A stretch of DNA of 64,000 bases from Macrostomum hystrix. Taxonomy: Eukaryota > Animalia > Platyhelminthes. Below are positions 10,101 to 64,000 of the stretch, in pieces. The notes beneath the pieces are model-generated. The model was not told the origin of the DNA. It saw nothing but the letters and a program-made list of their open reading frames with translations, and searched no databases. A program made the position numbers and the translations under genes. The stretch is from NCBI GenBank assembly GCA_950097015.1, contig CATNEN010000033.1, positions 4,588,001 through 4,652,000 on the forward strand. The letters run 5' to 3'. Within the stretch, counting starts at the first letter, position 1, and every line of letters starts with the position of its first letter.

Positions 10101-11122
10101 ATTGCTGATCCGGTGTAAGAGAATAGCTGCTTGTGGGTCGGCGTGATGACAAGTTGCTTCGGAAGTCGCTTTACGGTCTTCTCGTTGATGATGTTGACCC
10201 TTGAGCCGGTGTCCAACAAGAGTTTGACGTCGATTTCAGCAATGCTGCAGTCTACGAAGCTTAAAAGAGATGCGTCGCCCTGAATTGCAGACACCTCAAA
10301 TGGCTCATTGTCGTCGTCGTCATCCTTGACGGTGCGGACCTTACGTCGCTGTCGGAAACATGACTTAAAATGACCGACCCGGTGGCAGTGCAGGCAGGAC
10401 TTGTCCTTCGCTGGACACTCAAGGGCGCGGGCAGCGTGCCCAGCCATTCTGCAGTTGCCGCATCGCGCGTCCGAGCTAGACTTCTGCGGCATCGCATGCT
10501 TGGGTCCTTTGCGTGGCGGACGCTGGCTGATCTTCTGGATGCGGGACTCCAGCTCCTTGTCGTTCTTGCCGTCGCTCAGGTTCTTGGTATCGTTGATGGC
10601 GGATTCAACTTGAATCGCTAGGGCTGTGGCTGTCTCCAGCTCGAGCACCTTCTCCATGAGCAGTCGCTCTCTGATGAACGGTGAATGGGTCTTCTCTATG
10701 ATCTGGTCCCTGATTATCTGGTCTTGAAGAGCGCCGTATTCGCAGTCTGCTGCGAGTTCGCGAAGGGCGTCAACGAACCGGCTGATCGGCTCGCCAGACA
10801 TCTGGGCGCGTGATTTGAATCTGAAGCGGTTGCTGATGGTGCTATGCGACTGGCCGAAGATCGTCTTCAGCTCTTTCACCAGCTTGTCGAAGGTGTCGAC
10901 GTTTGCCGTTGGCAGATTCCTCCTCAGCGTGTAGATTCGCTGGCCCTCCTCGCCAAGCAGATGGATGAGAATCGCCTTCTTGCGTGCGTCCGATGCTTCG
11001 TTAAGGTCCAAGGCCTCCAGGTAGATCTTGAATCCTTCGATCCAACGATTCCAATGCGTGTGTGGCTGTCCTGGGTGGGCGAGAAACAAGCGTGGCTCGG
11101 AAATGCTCAGGCTGGTCGCCAT
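7186..11122 (-). pseudogene. Disrupted gag-pol of Gypsy element 1
   Basis: Two CCHC knuckles, protease LLDTGS, RT (SVDD), RNase H (YALGAVLLQ..PVAYASR), HHCC and rve (TDNGPQF, NAERLNR). Frameshift near 9325, in-frame TAG at 9105-9107, frameshift near 7670. Confidence 0.9.
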
Positions 11123-11339
11123 GTTATGTGTGAGGCAGCGTGGCCAAATGAAGAACGGAGCACTGGGTTGGAAAAAACGCGAGCCCTCCAAAGGCCTGTG
11201 CGCACTAATATATATTTTAGTCAGTCAGAGTAAACAACAACCCCCGTCCCGGCCTAGACCGGTTCGGACGACCGACCCCCCAGCCAATCAAAACGCGCCA
11301 CGCGCACTCTAAGGCGGCATGCAAGCCGCATACACAACA
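11122..11339 (-). repeat. 5' LTR of Gypsy element 1 (218 bp)
   Basis: Matches 6873-7086; followed on the minus strand by the PBS. Confidence 0.92.
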
Positions 11340-28497: not shown

Positions 28498-31400
28498 TCA
28501 ACGACGTCGCCGTGCCGCGTCCCGGCTGCTGTCCATACTGTGCTCAAAGCACGAGGAGCAGCAAGTTGACTGTACATAGCTGCACGCTCCCGGCTCTTGC
28601 TGCAGCACCAGGCTGCAGTACTCAGCGTCCTGGTCCACACAGTCCCGTGGAGGCACGGTGGCTGCGGGATGGATTGGAGCTGGTGAGATTCTGCAGCGTG
28701 CTAATGTCAACTTAGCCAACTAAAATCAGTAGCTGGTCGATCCAGGCGACTAGAAACGCCGAGGCATCTCACCCAGTCCTTCCCAGATTTTAGCCCCATT
28801 GGCTCTCAAATAAAGAGCAAGCCACTCCTACCAGAACACAAACACATGCAGACTGCTAGAGGTATATCCTTCTGAACACTCGGGCACATTAAAAAGGAGA
28901 GCAGCCAACAATGCTCACCAGGTATGCACTCGACCGCGAACTTCGTGCAGTCATTGATGTCAAGACAGCTGGGGCGGCAGACATGACCCCTCTGGCAGCT
29001 GTCCTCCTGGCAAGGGGTCACGCACTGGCAGGTGGGGCAGTCGCTCGCGTCTTTTTTGTAGCCGTAGCGGCAGATGGTGTCGCACTGAACGTTACGGCAT
29101 TCTGCAGCGTCAGGGAGACCGGCAGCGAGTGTTCGAGATTGAGGAGAGATATTAAGAACCAGCAATACAATACAACAACAGAGATGTCATTGCCCAGACA
29201 CCAGATTGCAGCCTATCTTAAGAAGGACCCTTCTGCATTTCTGGCGAATAATTTAAGCGGATCGCACTGACGCTTCAAACTCAGCCAACATCGGTCAACC
29301 AAAGCAGTCGAGGCACATACATTTTTTATTCATAACAAAGCTTTGCGTAGCCACGAAAGCCACAGATTTTATCATAGGATGCGACAGCACTCACTCGACT
29401 CTACTTTGATGGCGATCCGCTCCGACTCCACCGTCTGAAACTGGTTGCTGATCCGACAGAAGTAGCTCCCGCTGTCCGACATCTTCAGTGGGCTTAAATC
29501 CAACGACATGCCGATGTCTCGCGGCAGAAAGGCGGCTGAGGAGTTGTCTGCAGCTCCAGGCGGCCTCACCTCTTTGAACCATTGGAACAGGTGCGGCGTC
29601 GGATAGCCCGTCTCAGAGCGGCACTGCAGCCTATTTCGGCCGCCCTCAACGCTTCTGCCATCCAGCCTGATGACCTCCACTGAGGCTCGCAGCGACTCTC
29701 GAAATTCCACTCTCACCTTGGCGCTGGCAGGCGGGCCGGCGCTGTTTGTTGCTTGGCATGTGTACTCGCCCACAGTGGCGGGGCCCGCCGTCAGTGTCAG
29801 ATTGGAGCCCTGAGTCATTTTTTTTAATTATTAGCACTTTTTTTTCAAATAACGAGAAGTACTTTTGGAAATATGCGATTCAGATCATGCTTGAAGCTCT
29901 TTGGGCGAATTAGTATCGATATTAAACTGCGAGTGATTGATTTATAGGAGTGATTTCCATAGGAGGCATATCAGACGACAAACATTACTGCGAAAACTCC
30001 GGCAGACTCACCGTCTCACCCGCCATCGGGGCGCCATTTCTTAGCCAGGTGATTTCCGGCTCCGGCCTGCCGCTGGTTTCACAGGTAAGCTGCACTGCTT
30101 CGCCTCGCACAGTCAGTGGCTGCGCCGGTGCCTGTACACCTAGAACAGCGGCCGGGACCTGAACCTCCAGCCGGATCCGGTGCGACTTCTGGCCTTGCGA
30201 GTTGAAGGCTGAGCACTCATACTCACCAGAATCAGCTTCTGCGACCTGGCGCAGCATCAAACGCTGGCCGTCGACACGGACCCTCTGGCTCTGTGTAACT
30301 GGCCGGTTGTCCTTCAGCCATAGCACCTTCGGCTGTGGCACGCCCAAGAATCCACAGTCCAGACTCAGCAGAACGCCCAACACCTTGACAATTTCTGTCT
30401 CCGTGCCGTTCATCTTGAAGGGAATCGGCTGGAACGGAGGACAGTTGGTGAGCTTCGGCTCGGCTGCAGCAGTTTTCCCATCAGGACAACAGCCGAACGT
30501 TGTCTGGTCGCATGGGACCTCCGGCGGTCGGCTGGTTGTTGGTGGCGGTGACGTCACGTGGGGATCCTGGCAAGCCCGGCCCTGTGCGCAGCCGATCTGA
30601 CAGCACTTCTGCTGTTCGTTTGGGCAGTCCAGGTCGAAGTCGCACTGGCGCTCACAGGTGTCGCTGGAGATTCGGATGGGTGGACAGTCGCCTGGCCGGG
30701 TCACTGCAGTTGTTTCGAATGATATTGTGAGAGCTTGATCGCGCACACACATCACTAAGGCGTAGATTTTAACCCTAATCATCCCAACTCACAAGCTAAG
30801 CACTTGGTGTGCACCTCAGTACACCGCTCGTCACTGCAGCTTGCTTTGCAACGCTCAGTTGGTGGGCATTTTCCCTCACAGGGATCGAAGCAGCTGCAGA
30901 CCAGGCACCCGTTGCTGTTTATCTGCTGAACGTGTTGCTTGTACTTGCAATTTGCCGGACAAGAGCTGGACGGGCACTCTGCAAGAAATAGTAGTTTTCC
31001 TGGTGTCGAATTGCATCCGGCGCTAGTGTGTATAAAATCTAGACAATAAAACTCACGCTTTGTCACCGTCGGGCAGGACGTCTCACAGTCCGTGCGACTC
31101 CAGAATGCGGGGCCGCTCAGCTCCGAGTCGTTGCAGGCCAACGCTGAAGACTGGAGTATGTTGCAGTTGAAATTCTGGAACGCGAAGATCTGACGTAGAT
31201 GAGTTTCAGGGCAGGAGCTGACTGGGGTTTTACTCGTCACGCTGGGTGATTGGCCCAGGCACACATCAATGCTGAAGGTTGTGGTTGGCTTCGGTACGTC
31301 AGTTGAAGTTGAAGTGGCTGCGGTGGTTGTTGCGGTGGTGGTCGTGACCATTGGAGCTGTTGTGGAAGAGACAGCACTGCTCCCTCTGCCTGTGGGCCGT

Positions 31401-34400
31401 ATCGCGACGATGCGCTTGGCTTTACATTGGGTCTTGCACTGCTCGCCTGTGACAAACAGGTTCTGGCTGCCACCACAGCCGTAATACGTGAACTCGTGGC
31501 AGTTTTTCGTTGTACTACTGTAAAAGTACATAGCTCTTTGCGAAGCTTCCACTGTCTGTCCTGGGCAAGTGTGACCGTGCGAAGGAGGGTATAAGCAGGG
31601 ATTGCTCTGCAGCTGACTCTGGCACATCTTGCGGCACTCGTGCATCGTAAGGAAGCGATTCCGGTTGCCAAGGCAACCACCGTAAGTCATTTCGTCGCAT
31701 GCTCCCGTGTCCTGGTTGAAGTAGTAGCGCTTCAAGCTGACATTGCACGGGCCCGTCTCCTTCGGCAAAAGGCAGATCTGGTGGCGCTTTTCCGGGTAGC
31801 AGTAGTTCTTGCAATCTGTCCACGAGCTGAAGAAGTTCAGGTCGCTGCCGTGCCTGCCCATCGACTGGTAGCAGTTAAATGAGGAGCTGTCGTAATAGAA
31901 CCCGAGTCTCTGTCGATTCTCGGCACTGGTATCTCCACTCGGGGGCCTTGAAGGTGCTGGAGCGTCTTTTGGTAGCTGACAGCGGTCCTGCACCATGTCC
32001 AAGGTCATCCAGCCACCACTGCAGAGCTTTTGGTGCGCCTCGCACAAGCTGCCGGGCTGACAAGACGTGGGCGTCACCTGGCACAACGATTGTTTGCTCG
32101 AGACTGAAAAGCATTGATGAAAAGAAGGTTCCAGAGAGAAAAAAGTTCATTACAGATAGCTCGTAGTTCCTTAATATGATAATCATTATCATGTTTCTGT
32201 ATCACAGTTGCGATGTCTATTCCACTCTTATATACGAGATTATAGCTAGTTCATCATTTTTCTAAGCACCAATAAGCAACCAGTCAGTGACTTCAAAGGC
32301 TTTTTTGAAGCTTTGGAATCTATGAATTTCCTTACCATAGTTCTTGCAGGCGTAGATGCAGTCTTCGGCGGTCTCGAAATTGTTGCCGTTGCCACCGCAG
32401 CCAGTGTACTTAAATACCGAGCACTTATTCCTCTTTGAGTCATAAAAGAACCTCAAAAGCCTCTTCCCGTCCGTCATCGGACAGGAGCCTGCTGACGGTC
32501 GTAGGCCGCAGACTCGGCCTTGAACCAGCAGAGGCGCTTGGCCCTCCGCTATCGGCAGGCGGCTGTTGTGGGCAGACGCGCGCTGTGGCGGTGACGTTGC
32601 TGGTTCAACAATACAAGTCTTTTGGCACGCAACCTCATCGAAGAATCGATTTTTGTTGCCATGGCATCCAGTGTAGGCGAACGACAGGCACTTACGCTGC
32701 TCTGGGCTGTAGTAGTAACGAATCAGCTCTTTTCCCTGCGAGGCGCACGCACCGGGGTCCTTCGGTAAGCTGCAGAGCTCTGAGATTGGAGAATGGCGAA
32801 ATTTTTGGGCTGGTGGACCACACACAGAGCTGCACCGTTGAATACTGCGAACAGATTTCTAAGTCGGAAGGTCATGTCCGGCTGGCGGCACGCATCTAAG
32901 GGCCCTCTGTTGCTACATCCCATCCTATATCCTATTTTTCGTTTTCTGTGTGTGCCGGCTTACATTCCGTCAGCGTGATCTTCTACCTGTATTCCACTGC
33001 TAAGGCTGCCTCCACTCGCCCAATGATGCCAGCGTCTAGTCCGCTCCTCGACGGAAGAGTTGCGGAATGTTTTGTGTGGGCCCTCGATCACACGCCAGGT
33101 CAAATTTGTCTTTAATTTCTATAGGCATTCGGGTTTGGCTAGCCCTTATCCCTCTCTGCTCCTGTTGCCACATCGATGTTTAAGGCAAATAATAGTGCAG
33201 GTATCAGTCCTGCTGGGAACGTGCCAAACCTTCTACAGAGCTGGGCAGGCAGAACTTCTGGCACTCCTCTCGCGAAGCGAAGCTATTGCTGACCCTGTCA
33301 GTGCCGCAAGCCCGACGACTGATGCACTGCTTGGTCTGTTCGTTGTAGAAGTACCTTTTCTCTCGGTAGGGGCACACTATGCCGTCCTGTTCGGAACTGA
33401 AAACAGCGAAGCATCGATCTGGAATTGTTTAAAAAATGTGTGAATTGCTTTTTAAGCTTGGACCCACAGAAAAAAAGAATAATGCTTCCCGCATTACACA
33501 CCTTGGATGATGCTGTCCTTGGCGGGGATCAGACACTGGTCACTGCAGGCTTGCTTCTGCCGAAAGAACTTGGAGTCTGCGAGTCCGCCGCACTCAGGAT
33601 TATCTCTGAGGACGGCCTGAATGCAGGTGCCGACCTTTTTAACATAATAGTACACCAGGGCACTTGACGAGTACCTGGAGCTGTCGTAGTCGATACAAGC
33701 GCTGGCCTCCTCAAACGAGCAGTTGGGCTTGTTAAATTCTAAGTAGGCAATTGAAAATGTTATTCAATATTATTAGGTCAGAAGATTTTAGTTATGCAAA
33801 TCATCAAAAGTGGGAAACGTGGATCTAGAACGCACGTTGAAAACGCCTCAAACAGAAGATCTCGCATTCCTCCATCGAGTCGAAGCGGTTTGAGGAGCCG
33901 GCACTCCCGTAGTAATTGTAACTCCTGCATTCACCATCGTTGGGCACATAGCCATAGGCGGTGATGGCTTTTGAGTCCGACATCCCATCAATCATGTTTC
34001 CCTGGCTTGTCTCCTGGCGACAGGGTTCGAAATCTAAAAATATTTTCGTTGCGTCACAATTTTTCGTAATATGCCAGCGTCATAATAAGTAAACGTAATC
34101 AGCGAGGCAAAACCCAACTTTCAGTGCGTTCAGCTTAAAGCTTTCCCCCTACAGCTTTGTCAAAGCAAATAAACCAAACAGTCACATCCATATGGATGCA
34201 GGTAAATCAACAGTAAAAAATTGGATTAATAGCTTCCTACAATAGTTACCTACTAACAAGAACATATTTATGAGAATAGTTAAAGATCACGTACTTAAAA
34301 TGGGCATCGAATTGGTGCGTGCAGGGGCTACAGTTGTGAAGACTGTTTGATTTGAACTTCTTCCAACTACGGGCCGCTTTAGACGGTCATTCGATGAATC

Positions 34401-40870: not shown

Positions 40871-43178
40871 ATGACTCATCAGCAGCATCAGCAGCAAGTG
40901 GCGTCGGCGGTAGCATCCGCTGTGTCTTCCGCTACCACCTTGATTAGGGTTCGGCCAGAGTTCTACCTGGCCGACCTCGGTTCTCAGAACCCGCCGGCGC
41001 TCACCTTTGCCTTGCCGTCGCGAGCATTTAACTTCAGCGGCATCAGCGGTGGCGATAGTGGCGGCGGTGGCGTCAGCGGCATCGTCAACAGCGCCTCCTC
41101 CAGCTGCTCGCTGCCAGCGGACATCTCAGACGCAGGACGTGGCGGAGTTGACGAAGATGAAGCTCCTCCTGCTTCTGACAGTCGCCGGCCGCCGCTGCGG
41201 CCGCAGCGGAAGAGTTCGGCCACGAGTCCGCTGGTGGTATGCACCTGCCGTCGGCGGCTGATGAGCAATGACGAGGATGAAGACGACGGCCAGTGGCTGC
41301 CACCGCGACCGCCACCAAAACAGCTGCAGCCGCCGACGCAGCATTCAGTCGTTAGTGACTTAAACTTTAGTATTCAAAGCTGATCGATTGAGAGTTGGAA
41401 TGCCAAAGAAATCACTGATTTCATAAGGTCGCGCGATTTTATGGCGCAAAACTATAATCTTCTGGCAATTTATTTTTCCTGACTAGAAAGCCGTAAACGA
41501 ATCCCGCAGAATCATTTGTTCGGACGCGCCGGAGAGCAGCGCGGGCATTATTCAGCTTTCGAGTCCTCATCATACTCTATGGAAAACCTCCATCAGGTTT
41601 GGCTTCATGTCTTCCCACCTGCAAACTAACGAACTGCTTGGGTCAGACAGGTTTCGCCCAGCCCTGTGACAGGACTGATACTTGCAGGAATGGGTTTCCA
41701 AAGCTGCGGATTAGTCTGAACCGGATGGCAGATGAGGCACATCGCTTGTTGGGGATGGGGGCTGATACCTGGGCTTAAGTAAAGTCTGTCTATCCATACA
41801 GGCTTGGCTTATTTCGGCGACGGATGCTGGATTAAGGTTTGGGGTCTAATCAGAGCTTATGAGCATACTCAGCTAGCAAAATGACATGCGTCATTCGAGG
41901 TTCAGCAGTTTCTGGCCCTCCAGATTATCGAGAATTTCAACCTGGATTGGTGGCTAGCTGAACCTTGAAGATTCGTTAAAACTTATTCCTGGGAGGCTCA
42001 GCTATGCTTCATCAGATCAGTTTGAGAATATATTAATAGCAAGCTGAGCTGATTCAATCGTCCTATAATAACTTAAGAACACTGAAACTTTCCGCAATGC
42101 ACTCTGAAAATGAACTCAATCTGTGCCATAGGTGCTATAAGTAGTCGGAAGAAAAAATCGGTTGCATTGTAGTCCCATTGATGTTTAAAAATCCCAAAAA
42201 GCTAAAGCTAATCTCTATAAAGCTTGGGGCACCCACCACAAGTCCAAGAACTCGTTATAAATGCCGCACACTCATCTCTTTTAGCCCAGTAATTAGACCT
42301 TCGGACATAAAATTCACCCAGCTGTAATATGGCTCCGCTAGGGAAGACTTTTTTTCGTTTTGTGTGGCTACCCCTCTTCCCAGTCCATGGACTGAACAGT
42401 TGTATGCTTTGCCCTAGAAGCGCCGCGCAATAGTAGATCTAGCCAGAATGGGTTCGCTGTCATTTAGCTTCTCAATGAAGAAAAATCACGAAAACCGTCG
42501 CCTTAGTTTGTCTCCCAAAAACTCAAAAGGCAGCGGAGCGCGAGCGGGACGGCTTCGCATCGGCGACCCGTCGTCTCGAGGAGGAGAACGAAGCTCTGCG
42601 GCGTCAGCTACGTGACGCACGTCGCCAGCTGGAGGACGCGGAGCGGGAGTCCGAGCGACTGCGCGACGCGCACCTGCGTGCGGAGAGGGCACTGGAGGGC
42701 CGGGAACGGCTGCAGCGGCTGCGAGTCCGAGCGCTGGAGCAGCAGGTGCGCGATCTTACGACGCTAATCAGAAACTAAAAGTCAACACAATTGAAACACA
42801 AGTCAAAACAATACAATTGCCCGACCGTCATCTCTAAAGATTTCAGTGCTCAAGGAGCAGCAGCTCCGTCTTCAGCAGCGGCAGGTGGATGAGGAGGCAG
42901 GTGAGTCGCGCAGCCGCGCAGCCAGGCGATCGCATTCCCTCCGCCGGCATCAACGGCAGCTCCTCGATGGTGACGACCGAACGGGTATCGAACTGATGGA
43001 ATTGCGCGGCCTCCTGGACGCCTCTCTGGCGACAGTAAGTCAGGATCCTCGACTGGGTTCGGCGCTCCTGGAAGCTGAGACCCGTCGGCTCAGCGATGCC
43101 CTGCTGCTCCGTGGCGGACGTCGACACCTTCAGGAGGATGTTACACAGGCCGGCCGGCAGGGTGCCTGGAGGCGGTGA
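40871..43178 (+). CDS. Multi-exon coiled-coil protein of unknown family (model incomplete)
   Basis: Candidate exons 40871-41350 (low complexity), 41510-41596, 42534-42745 (TRRLEEENEALRRQLRDARRQLEDAERESERLR) and 42840-43178. At least one exon between 41596 and 42534 is unresolved (phase mismatch). Confidence 0.5.
42310..42405 (+). mobile_element. SINE family B fragment
   Basis: TTCACCCAGCTGTAATATGG...GTGTGG...CAGTCCATGGACTGAACAG, shared with the other family B copies. Confidence 0.5.
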
Positions 43179-44056
43179 AAGTATATCGGTGGCGTCTTTG
43201 GCCAGTGGTGTCTAGCAACGCTGTCACTTATCTTTTTTTAGATGGTAATAAAAGTCACCCACGAAAAGTACAGTACTTGCACTTGACAAAAAGTACATTG
43301 TAGAGCATGCTGATACTCGTAGCCAAGCTAAATTCCTGTAGTAGCGAAACAATGCTAAATACACTCGTATAAGCTTTGGGCTGGACCCGACGACATGCAC
43401 TTTACAAAATGCATATCCTAGCTCTTCTCTTTGGTCACTAGACCGCGACTTCAATTATAATTGTTTGACAAATAACAATAATGAACTGTTGAAAGTGTGA
43501 TTTTCATTTGTTTCAACCAATCGCTCAAGCAATAAAAAGGAATATAAGCATCAGCTAATCACGAATTTTTGTCCTAGATTTCATTCCACTGATTTGATTC
43601 GTGCACATTTTCTTTGTTTTCTTTGATAAGTCTTTTAGTTTCTTTAAAAGAGAATTTCATTCTGAGGGTTTCAGCCCTAAGCAAACTATATGACTGGCTC
43701 TATGATGTCTACAGGTATAATCTGTTTACAGTTGCGGATATGCCAGATTTGATTAGATTTTTTAAACATTATCTCAATCCCTATTTCAAATTTTAGCTCG
43801 TACATGCGCAACATCGCGTGACTTCATAAATCGCGAAATCAGACTTCGAGACTAGATGAAACTGTGACAGCCAACCGAATCGCTTGCTGCCAGCAAATCA
43901 CTTAGAGCTGTGGCCAATCAGACGAATTTCCCGCATGCCATTGATATAATTTAACAGTGCAGTTTAGCTTTACCTGCTCGTCTGCAGACAAGTCCTGGAG
44001 CATATTACCACCATATAATAGTACCAAACTGCTGGGCAGATAAAACTCAAGACAAT

Positions 44057-44420
44057 ATGAGGTGGCTGCAAATTATCCTACTGACTGCACTGGTCGCCAG
44101 TTCCGCGAACGCGCTCCTACGTCGCGGCCGTCACGACCTTCGTTCCGTCATTGTAGCCCAGCCGGCCGACTTCTTCGGCAATCCAGAATCGCTGAAGGAA
44201 TATCTGCACAGCCTCAACGGCTACTTTGCTGCGCTAGGCAGGGCGAGGTATGACGTCTGGCTTGAGAATGCCTCTCTGAGTTCCTAATTCATTATTTATT
44301 ATTGAATATAGCTTTATTGCCACAACTTTTTATTTCAGGTACAACAAGCGGGCCATCGAGTATGCCAACGAGCCGCTCAAGAAGGCGGCCTCGGAACTGG
44401 CGACGGACGATCAAACCTGA
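44057..44420 (+). CDS. npy: Neuropeptide Y/F-like precursor (90 aa) ending ...GRARY-N-KR
   Basis: Exons 44057-44247 and 44339-44420; phase-2 intron in the last Arg codon of RxRY, a hallmark of NPY/NPF genes. Hydrophobic signal peptide; LKEYLHSLNGYFAALGRARY; AATAAA at 44484. Confidence 0.88.
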
Positions 44421-46667
44421 CTTGAAATTTCAACTTGAAGTGGCACCAGAGATTTAGCTGAGGATGCTCTCTGAGTTATTTTTAATAAAGTCATAATTAG
44501 ATGAGAACTTATTGAATGTCTTTTAAATACACCATGAAAACTAAGTCATGTACTTTAGAAAACTGAAAAAGTCTCAAGACTGTCAACCATGCTCTGCAGA
44601 GGAATCAGACCATGCGAGCTAGGAGTCAAAATATTATCAATCACTTGTAATTCCGGCTATTTTATTTATTGTATTATTTTTTGTTTAAGTACTCACGCCA
44701 TAAACCACAATTGACAGCTATATACTGTTCATATCATGATGACAAAATATTACAATATTACATTTTATTTAAATCGTATTATCGTATCGATGATCATGTG
44801 GTCGTCGGCAAGGAAGCATCGATAAATGTCATGCGGGTATTCGCCATGAAGTTAGAACAGATAGTTCGGCCTGTCCCCTACTAGAAATCAGAATTGTCAC
44901 AAGCAGTGGCGAGAATTTTGAGAGCGAAGACTTTTTGGTATTTTAGTTGAAAGGTACCTCGATTTCCTTGAGTGGCTAGCTAGTAGTGTTTCCAGTATAA
45001 TATACACGATACGAATTATCATAAATATACACGATACAATGCTAAATTGTACCTAACAAATTACATCGATGCAACAGGCAACGATCTGCAACAAATTACA
45101 GTACGCGGTGCAAGACTTTTTTATTAAAGCAAGGGGTGAATTTTTAATCTGCTGATAGTTACATACGACAGCACATTTATCCATCAAAACCAATGATTGA
45201 ATATACGGACCTTCTGTTTTCGCTGCTCATTTGAATTTCAAAAGCCAGTTACATATTGCTTAATTTAGATCTGATAGATCATGGCACCCCAAAAAACGAC
45301 ACCTAGTCTATAGCATGCATGTTGTTAAAAATGTAAAAAATTGAGATTTGACACTCGTAGACTTAAAAAAGAGATTACTTTAGTATAGATTTCTCTCTTC
45401 TTGCTTTCGCTTTATTTTCGAACCATTTTGCCCGAGTAATTGAGAATTTTAATTTTTCTTTTAAGATATGTAGCTGCGACCTGATACATGTTATTGGGTT
45501 AAGCTGTTAGGTGGGCTGAGGGCTGTTTTAGTCCAGAATGCTCTTCAACCATAAAATTATGACTGACTTATTTCGTATTTAACGAATTTTGTCACAGTTT
45601 AAAAAATAAGCGCTGCGTATTAACTATTTATAACTTTAACTTTGTAATGTTGTATTGCATATCAAAACAATTTTTAAAGTAGCTCTGTAGTAAGTAACTA
45701 ATTTAATGCTACAACACAATTTGTGTGCATGAACATGATATGAAGTCAATGAAGTAATTAATTAAAGATGAAGTTTTCCTTTAGGGCCTATAGCATTTTA
45801 TTTAGGCTTTTACTTTTCCAAGATCCAAGTTAACTATTCCTTAACTTTAAAAAATAAACTGCGAGATATGCCTAAGTAAAGTTAGCCATCTTTTTGTATC
45901 TATCTGAACTAGGGCTAGGCCCCTAGTAAATATTGCACTGAGCAATTTTGCAAAATCACAGTAAATATATATGCCTTCACTTTATTACTTATTACTTGGC
46001 AGTTAAAAAATGTATGGAATATTGTGATCATGTTGATTGTTAGCAAAAGAAGTAGCACACTTATAAAACTTTTAAGGCAAAATGTACATATAATTTTAGC
46101 TCAAAGAAATATACTAATTCATAAAGTAGGCCTATATTAGAAATAAAATGCTATAGTGAAACTGTTTTTAATAAATAAATTCCAACACAATATTTACCTA
46201 AACTTTAGAATTTGAATGGGACTGGTAGGTTGCAGCAGTACTTTTAGATAATCTGTATGAATAGCCAGTGCATCTTGGTAGTGACCATCTGCCAATAGAT
46301 AATGTGGTTGCTTAATGATTAAATTCAAAATTTCATTTCAAACCAATTAGATGGCTCATAAAAAACAAAGAGCTAATGCCAGTGAAAACAGTTTTAGAAA
46401 TGCCACTAACCAATTGAATTCCTCATTTCATTAAAAAAAGTTGCATCTCAGATATTCTCTGAAGAGCTAGTTTTCATGTAAAACTAAAAGACAATGGCAA
46501 GCTTTAGTTGGTATTTGGTCTTAAACTGTTCTATGTTTTTTTACATTACAAAAATATCTTAGTCCTAACTGATCAGAGACTGGCAATCTCTCAATTAGGA
46601 AAGAACCCAATAATTACTGTTCAACAAAGTTTTTTTTAGAATTCTATTCAAAATTAGACATAAGACA

Positions 46668-46818
46668 GGGGGTTGGTAGCAGAGTGGTTAATGTGTTTGC
46701 CTCTCACACCATGGTCCCTAATTTCAACTCCCATGGTGAGGTCACATTTATTTGGGGTGCAGCCACAGAGAGAAGGCTTGCTCGCAGCCCTCCTGCAATA
46801 TTTTTTTATTATTTTATT
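46668..46818 (+). mobile_element. SINE family A, internally deleted copy
   Basis: Head and 3' tail match 52259-52628 and are joined at aaggcttg|ctcgcagccctcctgcaa. Confidence 0.75.
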
Positions 46819-46889
46819 CAGACATTAGAGAATTTATTTCATGTGCGACCCTTGCCGTCTGCATTTCCTCAGCTGACCCACCTGCCAAC

Positions 46890-47348
46890 ATGTCGCTGAT
46901 CATCCCGGCCAGCTTCAAGCACATCATTCGCATCTCCAACACCAACATCGATGGCAAGGTGATGGCCCGCACTGCCCTGACCTCAATCAAGGGCGTCGGC
47001 AGGCGCTACGCCGACCTGGTGGCCAAGCGGGCCGGCATCAGCCGCGACCGCCGCGCTGGCCAGCTGTCCGATGACGAGATTGAACAGCTCGTGACCATCA
47101 TTATGAATCCTCAGCAGTTCAAGATCCCGCACTGGGTGCTCAACAGGCAGAAGGACATCAAGGACATGAAGCACCGGCACGCCATTGGCAACCAGCTGGA
47201 CACCAAGCTGCGCGAGGATCTGGAGCGGCTGAAGCGCGTGCGCGCGCACCGCGGCCTGCGCCACTTCTGGAGCCTCCGAGTGCGCGGCCAGCACACCAAG
47301 ACCACCGGACGTCGCGGCCGAACCGTCGGTGTGTCCAAGAAGAAGTAG
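46890..47348 (+). CDS. RPS18: 40S ribosomal protein S18 (uS13), intronless CDS, divergent (152 aa)
   Basis: [23 protein letters not shown]...KGVGRRY...LNRQKD...LREDLERLK...[33 protein letters not shown]. Confidence 0.95.
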
Positions 47349-53800: not shown

Positions 53801-56800
53801 TATATTTTCACTACCGAAGGCGACTGTCCTCCAAGTGCAACTACAGATAAAAGCTTTGATTCTGCCTTATCAGCAATCAGCCAAGCCGCAGGCGCGCAGC
53901 TCCAGTGTCACCGTGCAGAAGATAGCCGAGACATCTTCTGTGACCGTCACAGAGGAGGATCTTCGAGAAGTCCCGGATTCAGTGAGTTTGGGAGAGTTGG
54001 AAAAAGCACTTTCAAGTATACTTTTTCGATATTTACAATTGAAGTTATTGTTTTATTCTTCTGCAGCATTCGAAAATAGACTCTATAAATCATTAGAAAG
54101 AATTTTCTAGAAAAATGTATTTTTATATTCTCTTTTCTTTTATTTCTACTATAAGTAGCTTTCACGGAAATGACTGATTAATTTTGGCCATATTCTTCGT
54201 AAAGAATGTTCTAGAAAGACCTGTCTAAAAATAGCACTCTGCAGCTTGGGCAAGCGGGTGACGGGCTGTGTGGAGAGTTCTGGAAGTTTCGCGAAGACGG
54301 GCTGTGGTCTATAAAAGAAGGCGATATTGCGGGCTCCTCCATCAGCAAATTCGGATCGCAACCGAAGCAAACCAAAAGCCAGAAGCATCTCACAAGCGAC
54401 TCACAAAGCGTCAGTGCTTTGCGAAGCTATCAATTGAAGCTAGAGAGAAGCGACTCAAGTTCTGAGAAGCAATTCCAAGCAACATGGGCAAGAGGAACGG
54501 ACCCGCAATCGGCATCGACCTGGGCACCACGTACTCATGCGTGGGCGTTTTCCAGGCAGGCAAGGTGGAAATCATAGCCAATGACCAGGGCAACAGAACC
54601 ACGCCGAGCTACGTGGCCTTCACGGACACCGAGAGGCTGGTGGGCGATGCGGCGAAGAACCAGGTGGCGATGAACCCGGAGAACACAGTGTTTGACGCCA
54701 AGCGGCTTATTGGTCGCAAGTTCAGCGACGAGACGGTGCAACGGGACCTGAAGCTGTGGCCGTTCAAGGTGGTGAGTGACGGAGGCCGGCCGAAGATTGA
54801 GGTTCAGTACATGGGCGAGAGGCGCAGCTTCTACCCGGAGGAGATCTCGGCCATGGTGCTGACCAAGATGAAGGAGACTGCGGAGGCCTACCTTGGCGAG
54901 AAGGTGATGGACGCTGTGATCACGGTGCCGGCCTACTTCAACGACAGCCAGCGGCAGGCGACGAAGGACGCGGGCGCGATCGCCGGGCTGAATGTGCTGC
55001 GGATTGTGAACGAGCCGACGGCAGCTGCTCTGGCCTACGGGCTGGACAAGAGCCTGGAGGGCGAGAAGAACATTCTGATCTTCGACCTGGGAGGCGGCAC
55101 GTTCGACGTGTCCATCCTGACGGTGTCGGAGGGCAGCATGTTCGAGGTGCAATCGACGGCTGGCGACACTCACCTGGGCGGCGAGGACTTTGACAACCGG
55201 CTGGTGGAGCACCTGATGCAGGAGTTCAAGCGCAAGTACCGCAAGGATATGAGCGGCAACGCTCGCGCAGTGAGGCGGCTGCGCACGGCGGCCGAGCGAG
55301 CGAAGCGAACTCTGAGCAGCTCGGCGCAGGCGAGCATCGAGATTGACTCGCTGTTTGAGGGCGTCGACTTTTACACCAGCGTGACCAGGGCTCGCTTCGA
55401 GGAGCTGTGCGCCGACCTCTTCCGCCAGACGATGGAGCCGGTGGAGCGAGCGCTGAGGGACGCCAAGATGGACAAGAGCAGCATCAGCGAGATTGTCCTG
55501 GTGGGCGGATCCACGCGGATCCCGAAGGTGCAGAAGCTGCTGCAGGAGTTCATGGGCGGCCGGTCGCTGAACAAGTCGATCAACCCGGACGAGGCGGTCG
55601 CCTACGGTGCGGCAGTTCAGGCGGCCGTGCTGACCGGCGTGAAGGACGAGAAGATCGAGGACCTGCTGCTACTGGACGTGGCTCCGCTGTCGCTGGGCAT
55701 CGAGACCGCCGGCGGCGTGATGACCAAGATCGTGGAGAGGAACAGCCGCATCCCGACTAAGGCGACGCAGACGTTCACGACGTACTCGGACAACCAGAGC
55801 GGCGTCACCATCCAGGTGTTTGAGGGCGAGCGGGCGCTCACCAGGGACAACCACCTGCTGGGCCAGTTCAACCTGGATGGCATCCCGCCAGCGCCTCGCG
55901 GAGTGCCGCAGATCGAGGTGACCTTCGACGTCGACGCCAACGGAATCCTGGTGGTGTCGGCGAAGGACAAGAGCACCAGCCGGGAGGAGAAGATCACGAT
56001 CACGAACGACAAGGGCCGACTCTCGAAGGACGAGATCGAGCGCATGGTGCGCGACGCGGAGAAGTTTCACGCGGAGGACGAGCGGCACCGCGAGCGTCTG
56101 ACAGCCCGCAACCAGCTGGAGTCGCTCGCCTTCCAGTACAAGCAGGCGGCCGAGGACTGCAAGGATCGGTTGGGCGAGAAGGAGGCCAGCGATGTGACCG
56201 CCGCGTGCAACCGCGTCATCTCCTGGCTGGAGAACAACCAGACCGCCGACAAGGACGAGATCGCCGAGCAGCAGCGCCAGCTGAGCAGCCTGTGCTCACC
56301 TCTCATGGCCAAGCTGCATCAGCAGCAGCAGCAGCAGCCGCCGCAGCACGGACCGCAGCGAGCGGGTCGCGCCGGCGGACCAACCGTCGAGGAGGTCGAC
56401 TGAGCGCATCTCCATGCACTGACTGAGCGTCCCTTTCTCATATTGTAGCCTTTTGGACTTACCTTAACGAGTACATGTTAATATTTGTGAATAAATTTAA
56501 ATATTTTGTTTACTGAAGCCAACATTGTGGTTAAAATTTCTATTCATAGAGAGAGTTGCCCTGCTCTCCTCAAGAATTTCAACTGTACATGTTTGTTTTA
56601 TATTTTTGACAGCCATTGTTTAATTCCTGCTTCGTTCGTTGAAGTTAAAATAAAAAATATTTCGGTTAAATTATGTAAACAATTGTGATACAGCTATAAA
56701 GTTATATTGTGTTGTTTCATAACACTGTTCATCAATCCCAATGAGCACTTAGTTCTTTGCTTGAGTGGCCGTCGAGTTGCGATCGACGGCTGGCGACACT

Positions 56801-61386: not shown

Positions 61387-64000
61387 CTATCAGGGGCCGC
61401 AGTTGAGTGACGTGTCGCATGCACGATTGTTCGCCGCGTTGAAGGACGCACGTGTCTCCCTGGACCAGCTTGACAGTCCACGGAGAAGGCTCAAAAGGCA
61501 GTTGAAGCTTGTTGCGCGGTTGCTGCTTTCGTAGAACTTTGCTGCCGTCAATGATGCCGTGCTCCTGGGCAGCCTTGCGGTCATCGAATCTTGATTTCAT
61601 ATCTTGCACGTAATTCCGGTGCCAGTCTTGAACTTCTTCATGATTCACCTCGACCGGCTGAGACGGCTTAGTGGTCGGGATGCCATCGTTCATCTTCCTG
61701 CCCATGAGGAGTTCAGCGGGTGCGCGGCCGGTTGCTCGGTGCGGTGTTGTGCGGAAAGCCAGCAGCCAGTCCTCGATGGCCTCCTTCCAGTTACGCCCTT
61801 CGGCCACAGCCGTCTGGATGACTTTTCCAATGCTCCGGTTGACTCGCTCTGTCGCTCCATTGGATTCAGGGTGGAGTGGGCAGATAAGGCGATGTCGAAT
61901 GCCATAGGTGGTGAGGAAGCTGCGGAAAGCGGCTGAATTGAATGGCGGGCCGTTGTCAGTGACCACCTCGATAGGTACGCCGAATCTACCGAACAGTCGG
62001 CGAAGGTGCGGGCTCACGCTCTCCGCTGTCGATGAGTTCAGGAAGCTGACTTATGGATATTTTGAGTAGAGGTCTGTGATGACTAGCAGCATCTGGCCCT
62101 GTACTGGTCCGTAGAAGTCCATGCCTAGAGTGAGCCAGGCACCGTCTGGGATCTGCGTTGGTTTAAGAGGCGTTTGACGCGCTCCAGTGGAGGCGGCCTG
62201 GCAGAGCGTGCAGCACTGAACAAAGCTCTCGCAGTCGCTGCGCATGCGAGGCCACCAGACTTTCGTTTGCAGCCGCTTCAGGGTTCGGTCAGCGCCTAGA
62301 TGGCCGGTGTGCGCTAGTTGGAGGACAGGCCTGCGCAGTGTCTCCGGGATGACGATGAGGTCGCCCCTTAGCAGGACGCCGTCACTCTCTGAGAGCTCGT
62401 TGCTGACGGTCTTGTAGGAGCGCTGGGCCGGGTCGCGGATATTCCAGTTACCGGTTCGGATGGCGCTTAGCGCCGCCTGGATGCCGCTGTCGGTGCCCGA
62501 CGCTTCCCGCACTTGAGCGAGGCTGAAGCCCTTTGGCACAGCTCCAGCCGACACGGCGTTGACGAAGGCGGTGTCAAGTTCTTCACCTACGTTCCTCCTT
62601 GATTCTGGCAGTGGCTGCCGGCTTAGCAGGTCGGCTGGATTGGTCGGCCCGGGTCGGTAAATCAGATCGAAGCGGAGGTGCTGGATGCGAAATGCCATCC
62701 GTTCGATTCGTGGCGGTGGACGAGAGCCAGGCTTGAACAGCGGCACGAGTGGTCGGTGGTCTGTTACTACAGTGAAGCCTGGGTCTCCGGCTAGGTAGTG
62801 TTCAAACTTCAAGCACCCGAATTTGATGGCCAGAGCTTCTCGCTCTATCTGCGCGTACCGCTGTTCCACTGCTGAAGGGGCTCTGCTGGCGTAAGCCACG
62901 GGTCTGCTGCTGCCGTCCGGCTGCCTCTGCGTGAGGATGGCGCCCAGTCCGACCGGGGAGGCGTCCACTAGGAGCTCGGTTTCCCGCCTGCGGTCGAAGA
63001 AGGCGAGCGTTTCCGCGGCGCCGATTGCTTTTTTAATGCTTTCGAATGCCGCAGTGTGCTTATCCGTCCACTCCCAGACCTGGCCCTTCTTAGTCAATTG
63101 ACGTAGGGGCCCGGCGAGGTGAGCGAAGTTTGGGACGAATTTTGACAAGAAGTTCGTGGTGCCGAGGAATGAGCGGACGTCGGAAACGTTTGCAGGTTGC
63201 CGAAAGCTCTGCATGGCCTCAATTTTCTCAGCAGCTGGCTCCATGCCCCGAGCAGTCAGGCGCATGCCGAGAAACTCGATGGACGGTCGGGAGAACCTGC
63301 ACTTGTCCCTGTTGAGGGTGATGCCGTACTCACGCAGGCGCTGAAGGCACGCGTCCAGTCTCTTATGGTGTTGCTTTAAATCAGATGCGTAGATCACCAC
63401 GTCATCGTGCGCCCACCGGACGCCTTCAATGTCGCTGAGGATGCCCAGCATGATCCGTTGCAAAATCTCCGAGGCATTCGTGAACCCCATGCTAAGTCTT
63501 TTAAGTCGCATTAGTCCGAGAGGCGTGCTGAAGGTGAAGTAGTGGCGGCTGTCTTCGTGAACTGGAATCTGGTAGAACGCCTTGCGGATGTCTAGTTCAC
63601 TGAAAATTTTAGCGTTGGCCATCTCCTCCGTGATATCTTCTAGCGTGGGGATCTGTTGTTTCTCCGGTATAACGAAAGCGTTGAGGTCGCGGAGATCCTG
63701 GCAGATTCTGACGCCCCCATCGGTCTTGGGCACTACTACCATACGGGATACCCAGGCGCTTGGTCCTTTGACGGCCTCAATAATGTCCTGCTTCTCTAGT
63801 GCCCGGAGTTCGTTAACTACGGCTTCTTTGAGGTGAGCAGCTACCCGGGAAGGCGCCTGGCATACCGGAATGGCATTTTCGGATAGCTGGACTTTGACCT
63901 CTACGCCCTTGATGCAGCCGATGCCGTTGAATGCCTCTTTGTGTCGGTGCAGGATTGCGTCGAGTTGAGGATCGTTTGACTGCGGTGACGGCGTGTCAGA

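What the first reader, a model, noticed from the sequence alone, without database searches (positions are those of the whole stretch)
44057..44420. NPY/NPF-like neuropeptide that cannot be amidated (GRARY-N-KR)
Seen: cleavage after Arg29 gives a 36-aa peptide SVIVAQPADFFGNPESLKEYLHSLNGYFAALGRARY with Tyr at 20, 27 and 36, and the family-diagnostic intron splits the last Arg codon. However, the residue before KR is Asn (AAC, 44343-44345), which is at least two base changes from any Gly codon. Established: NPY/NPF peptides end RxRF/Y-amide, derived from -G-KR, and the amide is important for receptor activation. Inference: a processed free-acid peptide ending RYN that may be an antagonist, a ligand for a diverged receptor, or a neofunctionalised paralogue.
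Basis: partly seen in the sequence, partly recalled or inferred. Interest (0 to 1): 0.75.

Follow-up and report, generated by a model that had tools for sequence, protein, structure and literature searches.

The report
Flatworm NPF-like hormone gene lacking amidation glycine
A small two-exon gene of the flatworm Macrostomum hystrix encodes a neuropeptide Y/F-type hormone precursor in which asparagine replaces the glycine normally needed to amidate the peptide's end, and the same oddity is kept in the distant relative M. lignano, so it is a real, conserved variant and not a mutation or a sequencing error.

Summary
Window 44057-44420 (+) is a two-exon gene: exon 1 44057-44247, a 91-nt GT..AG intron in phase 2 inside the last Arg codon, and exon 2 44339-44420. 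Exon 1 alone passes Pfam's cut-off for Hormone_3 (NPY/PP family). Exon 2 reads Y-N-K-R, with Asn (AAC, 44343-44345) where the family has Gly.

The genome is the published Macrostomum hystrix assembly. It holds about 16 NPY/NPF-type loci. All others give R[FY]-G-basic, except the closest paralogue, which reads RY-RRR.

An orthologue exists in M. lignano (Mlig008652, three copies, auto-named "Neuropeptide F"). It has the same intron and the same TAC AAC AAG CGN, and it sits in microsynteny. The intron is scrambled to shuffle level, while dN/dS in the peptide core is about 0.25. So the lack of Gly predates the split of the two species and the gene is under selection.

No alternative Gly-bearing exon lies within 20 kb downstream.

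Most likely product: a secreted long NPF-like peptide ending ...RxRY-Asn with a free carboxyl end.

The scan had earlier noted other NPF-type genes on other contigs of this genome, but not this one.

Verdict: new variant of a known kind, of moderate interest.

The parts
44014..44020 (+). TATA-like box (TATAATA), 37 nt upstream of the ATG
   Evidence: Read. The M. lignano orthologue has a TATA-like CATATATAG about 35 nt upstream of the first base of a transcript-derived partial model. Promoter function is inferred, not tested.
44057..44247 (+). Exon 1: start codon, signal peptide, pro-region and NPF-like peptide up to the first two bases (AG) of the last Arg codon
   Evidence: 63 complete codons plus AG.
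44057..44113 (+). Predicted signal peptide (19 residues: hydrophobic core, then Ala-Asn-Ala before the cut)
   Evidence: Inspection of the translation. No signal-peptide predictor was available. The N-terminus is similar in the M. lignano orthologue.
44156..44245 (+). Core matching Pfam Hormone_3 (residues 34-63 of exon 1), with the Tyr/aromatic spacing of NPY
   Evidence: 29.6 bits, cut-off 28.7. (C33:4632156-4632251 = window 44156-44251, 36.7 bits).
44248..44338 (+). Intron, 91 nt, GT..AG, phase 2 inside the Arg codon AG|G
   Evidence: The position is the same as in about 14 paralogues of this genome and in the M. lignano orthologue. It is described as typical of vertebrate and planarian npy genes in PMC2953531.
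44339..44420 (+). Exon 2 coding part: G (completes Arg), Tyr, Asn, Lys-Arg, a 22-residue C-terminal flanking peptide, stop TGA
44343..44345 (+). Asn codon AAC at the position of the amidation-donor Gly
   Evidence: The same codon AAC is present in M. lignano.
44346..44351 (+). Lys-Arg dibasic processing site (AAG CGG)
   Evidence: It is conserved in M. lignano (AAG CGT), while the peptide after it has diverged almost completely.
44484..44489 (+). AATAAA polyadenylation signal, 64 nt after the stop
   Evidence: Read. Function is inferred.

Best explanation
This is a functional, genus-conserved paralogue of the flatworm NPY/NPF neuropeptide gene family in Macrostomum hystrix. Its precursor cannot yield a C-terminally amidated peptide.

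**Shown here**
- The gene has the family's sequence signature, its R-x-R-Tyr end and its phase-2 intron in the last Arg codon.
- Asn replaces the Gly that peptidylglycine alpha-amidating monooxygenase needs.
- The same R-Y-N-K-R is present in the syntenic M. lignano orthologue.
- The peptide core evolves under purifying selection.

**Inferred from the standard prohormone pathway**
- The signal peptide is removed.
- A prohormone convertase cuts after Lys-Arg.
- A carboxypeptidase trims Lys and Arg.
- This leaves a long (roughly 36-46 residue) helical NPF-like peptide ending ...Arg-x-Arg-Tyr-Asn with a free carboxyl group.

**Further inference (weaker)**
The R-x-R-Tyr motif and the dibasic site are kept, while the flanking peptide drifts. 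The C-terminus therefore probably still contacts a receptor. That receptor is most likely an NPF-receptor-type GPCR paralogue that has adapted to a non-amidated ligand.

Rough odds:
- Real conserved gene without an amidation site: 0.85.
- Processed free-acid peptide: 0.7.
- Signalling through an NPFR-type GPCR: 0.4.
For: **Gene model and family**
- Gene model.
- Family signature: PF00159, 29.6 bits against a cut-off of 28.7; 36.7 bits.
- In this genome all other split-codon paralogues give R[FY]-G-KR or RFG-RRRR in exon 2. Only this gene (RY-NKR) and its nearest paralogue L003 (RY-RRR) lack Gly. The genome therefore uses the normal amidation route elsewhere.
- No alternative exon encoding R-[FY]-G-basic lies in the 20 kb downstream.
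- The gene is single-copy.

**Orthologue**
- A profile search of 1.84 billion proteins found P0003 (E 2.7e-8, full-length match). This is M. lignano Mlig008652g2.
- Two further copies exist, P0025 and P0026. All three end ...GRPRY-N-KR.
- Its locus L028 has the same phase-2 intron (80 nt), and exon 2 begins TAC AAC AAG CGT.
- Orthology is supported by reciprocal best similarity.
- It is supported by a tree (WIN+Mlig008652, support 93/92).
- It is supported by a collinear conserved upstream neighbour gene.

**Constraint**
- 19 of 30 core residues are identical, 7 of them through different codons.
- dN 0.23, dS 0.92, ratio 0.25.
- Intron identity is 53/91 against 50.7 +/- 2.4 for shuffles.
- UTRs and intron are unalignable.

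**Species**
The assembly statistics equal those of the M. hystrix assembly.
Against: - There is no direct transcript or peptide evidence in M. hystrix. The word search with exon 1 found no transcript-derived protein.
- Expression is inferred from the M. lignano models, one of which (P0025) starts in the 5' UTR and so looks transcript-derived.
- Only two species could be compared. Conservation of the single Asn residue has little statistical weight by itself.
- The nearest paralogue has Arg, not Asn, at that position. The identity of the residue may therefore not matter.
- By established pharmacology, free-acid NPY-family peptides are very poor agonists of vertebrate Y receptors. An NPFR-type receptor is thus not a given.
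- The N-terminal boundary of the mature peptide is unknown.
- The spliced two-exon product was never searched or folded as one sequence.
Confidence: 0.8

Rival explanations
1. It is a decaying duplicate. In a family of about 16 loci, one copy lost its amidation Gly, is no longer useful as a hormone, and is drifting towards a pseudogene.
For: The family is large and redundant. A second copy, L003, has also lost Gly, by a change that may be a single base (GGC to CGC). No M. hystrix transcript product was found.
Against: The open frame, signal peptide, splice sites, R-x-R-Y, Lys-Arg, TATA-like box and AATAAA are all intact. The Gly-less state is shared with M. lignano across a divergence that has randomised the intron. 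dN/dS is 0.25 in the core. All three M. lignano copies are intact.
Confidence: 0.08
2. The gene model is wrong. The real mRNA uses another acceptor or another last exon that supplies R-Y-G-K-R, and the Asn is never translated next to Tyr.
For: The splice was inferred from sequence only in M. hystrix. Several paralogues have introns of 1-6 kb, so a distant exon is conceivable in principle.
Against: A scan of all AG acceptors for 20 kb downstream finds no exon giving R-[FY]-G-basic. The chosen acceptor has a strong pyrimidine tract. The bases right after it (TACAACAAGCG) are identical in M. lignano although the intron before them is unalignable. The annotated M. lignano proteins use the same junction.
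Confidence: 0.04
3. It is a real gene, but its active product is not a classical NPF-type receptor ligand. The precursor has been recruited to another secreted role, for example a gland, seminal-fluid or antimicrobial peptide. Bovine seminalplasmin arose this way from a PYY duplicate. Alternatively, it acts as the uncleaved protein or through its C-terminal peptide.
For: Loss of the amide, which is held to be essential for Y/NPF receptor activation (established knowledge), fits a change of role. The precedent of PYY2/seminalplasmin is my own knowledge; PMC2698874, only equates the two names.
Against: The part that stays conserved is exactly the receptor-binding end (R-x-R-Y) and the helix core. 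The C-terminal flanking peptide is almost entirely different between the two species. The dibasic site is kept in orthologue and paralogue alike. There are no expression data either way.
Confidence: 0.2

Closest known systems
Macrostomum lignano Mlig008652 (PAA91104.1, PAA85310.1; UniRef A0A1I8J1G8, auto-named 'Neuropeptide F')
   Same: It is the orthologue. It has the same two-exon layout, the same phase-2 intron, the same R-Y-N-K-R with the same Asn codon, a similar signal peptide and the same upstream neighbour.
   Different: Identity in exon 1 is about 50%. It is present in databases only as an automatic or hypothetical entry. I found no paper that mentions it or its missing Gly.
Planarian NPY-superfamily genes npy-1 to npy-11 of Schmidtea mediterranea (Collins et al. 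2010, PMC2953531)
   Same: It is an expanded flatworm family with both Tyr- and Phe-ending members. It has an intron inside the Arg codon before the aromatic residue, and a signal peptide followed by one long peptide and then a dibasic site.
   Different: That paper's Figure 2 legend marks a conserved alpha-amidation site in the planarian precursors. The atypical npy-11 lacks the aromatic residue. Here the aromatic residue is kept and the amidation Gly is missing.
Paralogue in the same genome, C38:26927717 onward (L003)
   Same: It is the nearest relative in M. hystrix (48-51% over exon 1). It has the same intron phase, a short 79-nt intron, an RY end and no Gly.
   Different: It reads RY-RRR, so trimming would leave ...RPRY with a free carboxyl and no Asn. 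Its place in the tree is unresolved: it could share the loss with this gene or have lost Gly independently. No M. lignano orthologue was found.
Vertebrate NPY / PYY / PP and invertebrate NPF
   Same: It matches Pfam Hormone_3, has Tyr at the positions of NPY Tyr20/27/36, ends R-x-R-Y, has the phase-2 intron in the last Arg codon, and is followed by a dibasic site and a flanking peptide.
   Different: Those peptides are made from ...[YF]-Gly-Lys-Arg and are alpha-amidated. This one has Asn for Gly.
Bovine seminalplasmin / PYY2 (my own knowledge; named as PYY2 in PMC2698874)
   Same: It is a lineage-specific duplicate of an NPY-family gene that no longer makes an amidated Y-receptor hormone.
   Different: To my knowledge seminalplasmin's peptide sequence has changed radically and acts outside the nervous system. 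Here the NPF-like core and the R-x-R-Y end are conserved.

Membership tests
NPY/NPF precursor gene family (Pfam PF00159 Hormone_3) | Sequence match to the family profile above the curated cut-off | tested here: met
   exon 1 alone scores 29.6 bits against a cut-off of 28.7, E 7e-7, profile positions 2-33 of 36; 36.7 bits in the genome scan.
NPY/NPF precursor gene family (Pfam PF00159 Hormone_3) | Intron in phase 2 inside the codon of the Arg that precedes the C-terminal aromatic residue | tested here: met
   AG|gt...ag|G at 44247/44339. The feature is described for vertebrate and planarian npy genes in PMC2953531.
NPY/NPF precursor gene family (Pfam PF00159 Hormone_3) | C-terminal R-x-R-[Tyr/Phe] motif with aromatic residues 9 and 16 positions upstream | tested here: met
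   ...Y..L..Y......R-A-R-Y. The spacing equals that of NPY Tyr20, Tyr27 and Tyr36.
NPY/NPF precursor gene family (Pfam PF00159 Hormone_3) | N-terminal signal peptide followed by a single long peptide | tested here: met
   by inspection only: a hydrophobic core and A-N-A at residues 17-19. No predictor was run.
NPY/NPF precursor gene family (Pfam PF00159 Hormone_3) | Gly directly after the aromatic residue, as amide donor | tested here: not met
   Asn (AAC, 44343-44345). It is also Asn in M. lignano. By descent the gene is a family member, but its product is not an RY-amide/RF-amide peptide.
NPY/NPF precursor gene family (Pfam PF00159 Hormone_3) | Dibasic processing site after the amidation position | tested here: met
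   Lys-Arg at 44346-44351, conserved in M. lignano.
NPY/NPF precursor gene family (Pfam PF00159 Hormone_3) | Mature peptide detected, with its actual C-terminal chemistry | not testable with these tools
   This needs LC-MS/MS peptidomics.
NPY/NPF precursor gene family (Pfam PF00159 Hormone_3) | Activation of an NPY/NPF-type GPCR | not testable with these tools
   This needs receptor assays.
Spiralian NKY peptides | Long peptide ending in an RY/RF-amide motif (as described in the preprint read) | tested here: not met
   The amide cannot form. The best hits and the tree place the gene among Macrostomum NPY/NPF-type genes. NKY membership was not pursued further.

The most novel reading that the evidence does not exclude
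Macrostomum carries a genus-wide NPY/NPF-type hormone that is naturally non-amidated (ending ...R-x-R-Tyr-Asn-COOH) and signals through its own co-evolved receptor. To my knowledge and in the papers I could search, this would be the first documented member of the family in which the C-terminal amide, held to be obligatory for receptor activation, has been given up while the rest of the pharmacophore is kept. The second Gly-less paralogue (RY-RRR) would then mark a small free-acid subfamily.
Probability: 0.3. Interest if true: 0.65.

Novelty: new variant of a known kind. Interest (0 to 1): 0.45.

Why it matters
The C-terminal amide is treated as a defining and functionally essential feature of NPY, PYY, PP and invertebrate NPF. 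Here a paralogue keeps the helix core, the R-x-R-Tyr end, the dibasic site and the diagnostic intron, under purifying selection, in two deeply separated Macrostomum species, yet has no amide donor. This is a natural experiment on whether the amide is really indispensable, and on how ligand and receptor co-evolve after duplication.

M. lignano is a transgenic and RNAi-amenable model, so the question can be tested directly with peptidomics, in situ hybridisation, receptor deorphanisation and knock-down of Mlig008652.

On the sober side, flatworm NPY/NPF families are already known to be large and to contain atypical members. This adds a variant, not a new kind of system.

Tried and rejected
**Blank or near-blank searches**
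- The word-index protein search with exon 1 and with the paralogue's exon 1 gave nothing. These blanks only reflect the tool's need for shared 5-residue words.
- The word-index search with the M. lignano orthologue returned only itself. No further species could be added.
- Literature searches for a non-amidated NPY/NPF, for Macrostomum neuropeptide catalogues and for the gene name Mlig008652 found nothing relevant. Subscription-journal flatworm neuropeptide surveys are not in the library, so prior mention cannot be excluded.

**Ideas tested and dropped**
- Alternative last exon with Gly: scanned 20 kb downstream, none found.
- Second copy or haplotig of the gene in the genome: none.
- Assembly or sequencing error: rejected. 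Two bases would have to be wrong, and M. lignano has the same codon.
- Whether the paralogue L003 shares the Gly loss with this gene or lost it on its own: a 34-column tree and pairwise scores could not decide.
- Pfam scan of the conserved upstream neighbour: no family.

**Steps not run**
- Structure prediction. It would only show a helix.
- Any search, look-up or fold of the joined two-exon product. Exons were handled separately by reference.

Full report
**1. What is in the sequence**

Window 43700-44800 was read directly and translated exon by exon.
- An ATG at 44057 opens a 63-codon stretch that ends ...GGC AGG GCG followed by AG.
- GT follows at 44248. A pyrimidine-rich acceptor (...tttttatttcag) ends at 44338.
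- Exon 2 begins G TAC AAC AAG CGG and runs to TGA at 44418-44420.
- The intron is 91 nt and lies in phase 2, splitting the Arg codon AG|G.
- The product therefore ends ...G-R-A-R-Y-N-K-R plus a 22-residue flanking peptide.
- A TATA-like TATAATA lies at 44014-44020, and AATAAA lies at 44484-44489.

**2. Is it an NPY/NPF-type gene?**

Exon 1 alone scores 29.6 bits on Pfam PF00159 (Hormone_3, cut-off 28.7, E 7e-7). In a six-frame scan of the whole genome the same place scores 36.7 bits. Four further features are family traits:
- the hydrophobic N-terminus with A-N-A;
- the Tyr spacing (0, -9 and -16 from the C-terminal Tyr);
- the R-x-R-Y end;
- the phase-2 intron in the last Arg codon.

The intron trait is described for vertebrate and planarian npy genes by Collins et al. 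2010 (PMC2953531).

**3. Which genome?**

The own-genome search reports 220,453,370 bases in 42 contigs. Contig lengths include 35,345,953 and 13,505,968. These are exactly the total length, contig number, longest contig and N50 given for the Macrostomum hystrix assembly in Wiberg et al. 2023 (PMC10468722, Table 1). The best outside hits are M. lignano proteins. Two earlier notes of this scan had already called the genome a Macrostomum and noted other NPF-type genes on other contigs. This gene was not among them.

**4. The family within the genome**

PF00159 finds 19 matches over the cut-off, at about 16 loci. I derived the 3' exon for every locus with a split Arg codon.
- Thirteen give R-F/Y-G-K-R, or RFG-RRRR once.
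- The intronless multi-copy precursors all carry ...RPRFG.
- Only two genes lack Gly: this one (RY-N-KR) and its nearest paralogue on contig C38 (L003).

L003 is 48-51% identical over exon 1. After a 79-nt intron with a strong acceptor it reads R-Y-R-R-R and then a short acidic tail. So the animal uses the ordinary Gly-dependent amidation route for the rest of the family, and the absence of Gly here is specific.

**5. Could the model be wrong?**

I scanned every AG acceptor for 20 kb downstream of the donor for an exon that would complete Arg and continue with an aromatic residue, Gly and a basic residue. None exists. The gene is single-copy in the assembly.

**6. Orthologue**

The word-index search with exon 1 was blank.
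- Of 24 hits, one (P0003, 78 residues, E 2.7e-8, aligned end to end) ends ...G-R-P-R-Y-N-K-R plus 13 residues.
- It is M. lignano Mlig008652g2 (PAA91104.1).
- Two more copies exist. One is auto-named 'Neuropeptide F' in UniRef. One is a partial model that begins in the 5' UTR and is therefore probably transcript-derived.
- All three copies read RY-N-KR.
- The genomic locus (L028) shows the same phase-2 intron, 80 nt long. Exon 2 begins A TAC AAC AAG CGT.

Orthology is supported in three ways:
- reciprocal best similarity;
- a small tree, with this gene plus Mlig008652 at 93/92 support, and the Gly-bearing pair L020 plus Mlig022158 at 97/92;
- microsynteny: two coding segments of an unnamed upstream gene (window 42528-42758 and 42963-43139) match L028 924-1154 and 2073-2249 in the same order and strand.

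**7. Constraint**

Between the two species the intron is no more alike than shuffled sequence (53 of 91 against 50.7 +/- 2.4), and the UTRs do not align. In the 30 codons before the split Arg:
- 19 residues are identical, 7 of them through different codons;
- dN is 0.23, dS is 0.92, and the ratio is 0.25.

Directly after the acceptor, TACAACAAGCG is identical in both species, whereas the peptide after Lys-Arg is almost entirely different. From my own knowledge, M. hystrix and M. lignano belong to the two deep clades of the genus. The Gly-less state is therefore old, and the gene has stayed under purifying selection since. This rules out a private allele and argues strongly against a pseudogene.

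A caution is needed. With only two species, conservation of the single Asn is weak evidence that Asn itself matters, and the paralogue has Arg there.

**8. Most likely mechanism**

The steps below are inferred from the standard prohormone pathway. They are not shown here.
- Co-translational removal of a 19-residue signal peptide.
- Convertase cleavage after Lys-Arg.
- Carboxypeptidase trimming of Lys and Arg.
- No substrate for the amidating enzyme, because it needs a C-terminal Gly.

The product would be a long NPF-like peptide ending ...R-A-R-Y-N with a free carboxylate. For the paralogue it would end ...R-P-R-Y.

The N-terminal boundary is open. There the alignment shows a conserved G-R-H a few residues earlier. 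Depending on the cut, the peptide is 36 to 46 residues long.

Selection keeps R-x-R-Y and the dibasic site, so I think the C-terminus still contacts a receptor, most plausibly a diverged NPFR-type GPCR. This is inference.

**9. Rivals**
- A decaying duplicate: about 0.08.
- A wrong gene model: about 0.04.
- Recruitment to a non-hormonal secreted role, as with bovine seminalplasmin/PYY2, or action through another part of the precursor: about 0.2.

The evidence for and against each is given in the Rival explanations section.

**10. Comparison with what is known**

Flatworm NPY-superfamily expansions with Tyr- and Phe-ending members and one atypical member (npy-11) are published (PMC2953531). That paper's Figure 2 legend marks a conserved amidation site. 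Spiralian NKY and sNPF peptides also end in RY/RF-amide. I found no paper describing a non-amidated NPY/NPF-type precursor in flatworms, or naming Mlig008652. The library lacks most subscription journals, so earlier mention cannot be excluded.

By descent the gene is a member of the NPY/NPF precursor family. By product chemistry it fails the family's amidation criterion. I file it as a new variant of a known kind.

**11. Limits**
- There is no expression or peptide evidence for M. hystrix.
- Only one other species was available.
- The position of the RY-RRR paralogue in the tree is unresolved, so one ancient loss and two independent losses remain equally open.
- All searches used exon 1 or exon 2 by reference.
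- No contig here looks human.
- The retrotransposon ORFs in the window were only named, nothing more.

Noticed in passing
L003 1387-1711 (G000:C38:26927717 onward, + strand): This is the nearest paralogue of the gene. It has the same layout with a 79-nt phase-2 intron, but exon 2 reads R-Y-R-R-R followed by a short acidic tail, so it also lacks the amidation Gly. Gly to Arg here could be a single base change (GGC to CGC). A TATA box and AATAAA are present. Whether it shares the loss with the window gene is unresolved.
   Followed up: partly
L013 (G000:C34:3172617-3172910, -), L005 (C34:3167768-3167968, -), L008 (C38:10193196-10193390, +), L022 (C5:5302909-5303010, +): These are intronless precursors that carry two or three NPF-length units in one open frame. 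Each unit ends ...RPRFG: SRPRFG in L005, L008 and L013, and NRPRFG and GRPRFG in L022. All units but the last of L008 and of L022 are followed by a basic cleavage site. A krill protein found in the profile search (P0002) has a similar triple arrangement.
   Followed up: partly
L006 / L026 (G000:C30:2951451-2951537, +): This NPF-type gene appears to use a GC donor (AG|GCAAGT) at the conserved phase-2 position, with an RFGKR exon 684 nt downstream.
   Followed up: no
window 42528-42758 and 42963-43139 (+): These are coding segments of an upstream neighbour gene with no Pfam match. They are 52-75% identical at protein level to segments at the same relative position in the M. lignano locus L028 (microsynteny).
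   Followed up: partly
window 46752-47348 (+): An open frame with a full Ribosomal_S13/S18 domain (E 4e-46) is the downstream neighbour of the neuropeptide gene.
   Followed up: no
window 7566-11191 (-) and 62051-63742 (-): Long ORFs carry reverse transcriptase, RNase H and integrase domains (LTR-retrotransposon type). They were only named; no further work was done on them.
   Followed up: no
window 54484-56403 (+) and 30779-32086 (-): There is an uninterrupted 639-residue HSP70 ORF and an ORF with Kunitz domains.
   Followed up: no
P0013 / P0028 (M. lignano Mlig022158) and L020 (G000:C41:2343992-2344075, -): This is a Tyr-ending, Gly-bearing (RYGKR) orthologue pair that forms one clade with the two Gly-less genes. 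The Macrostomum RY subfamily therefore contains both amidated and non-amidated members.
   Followed up: partly
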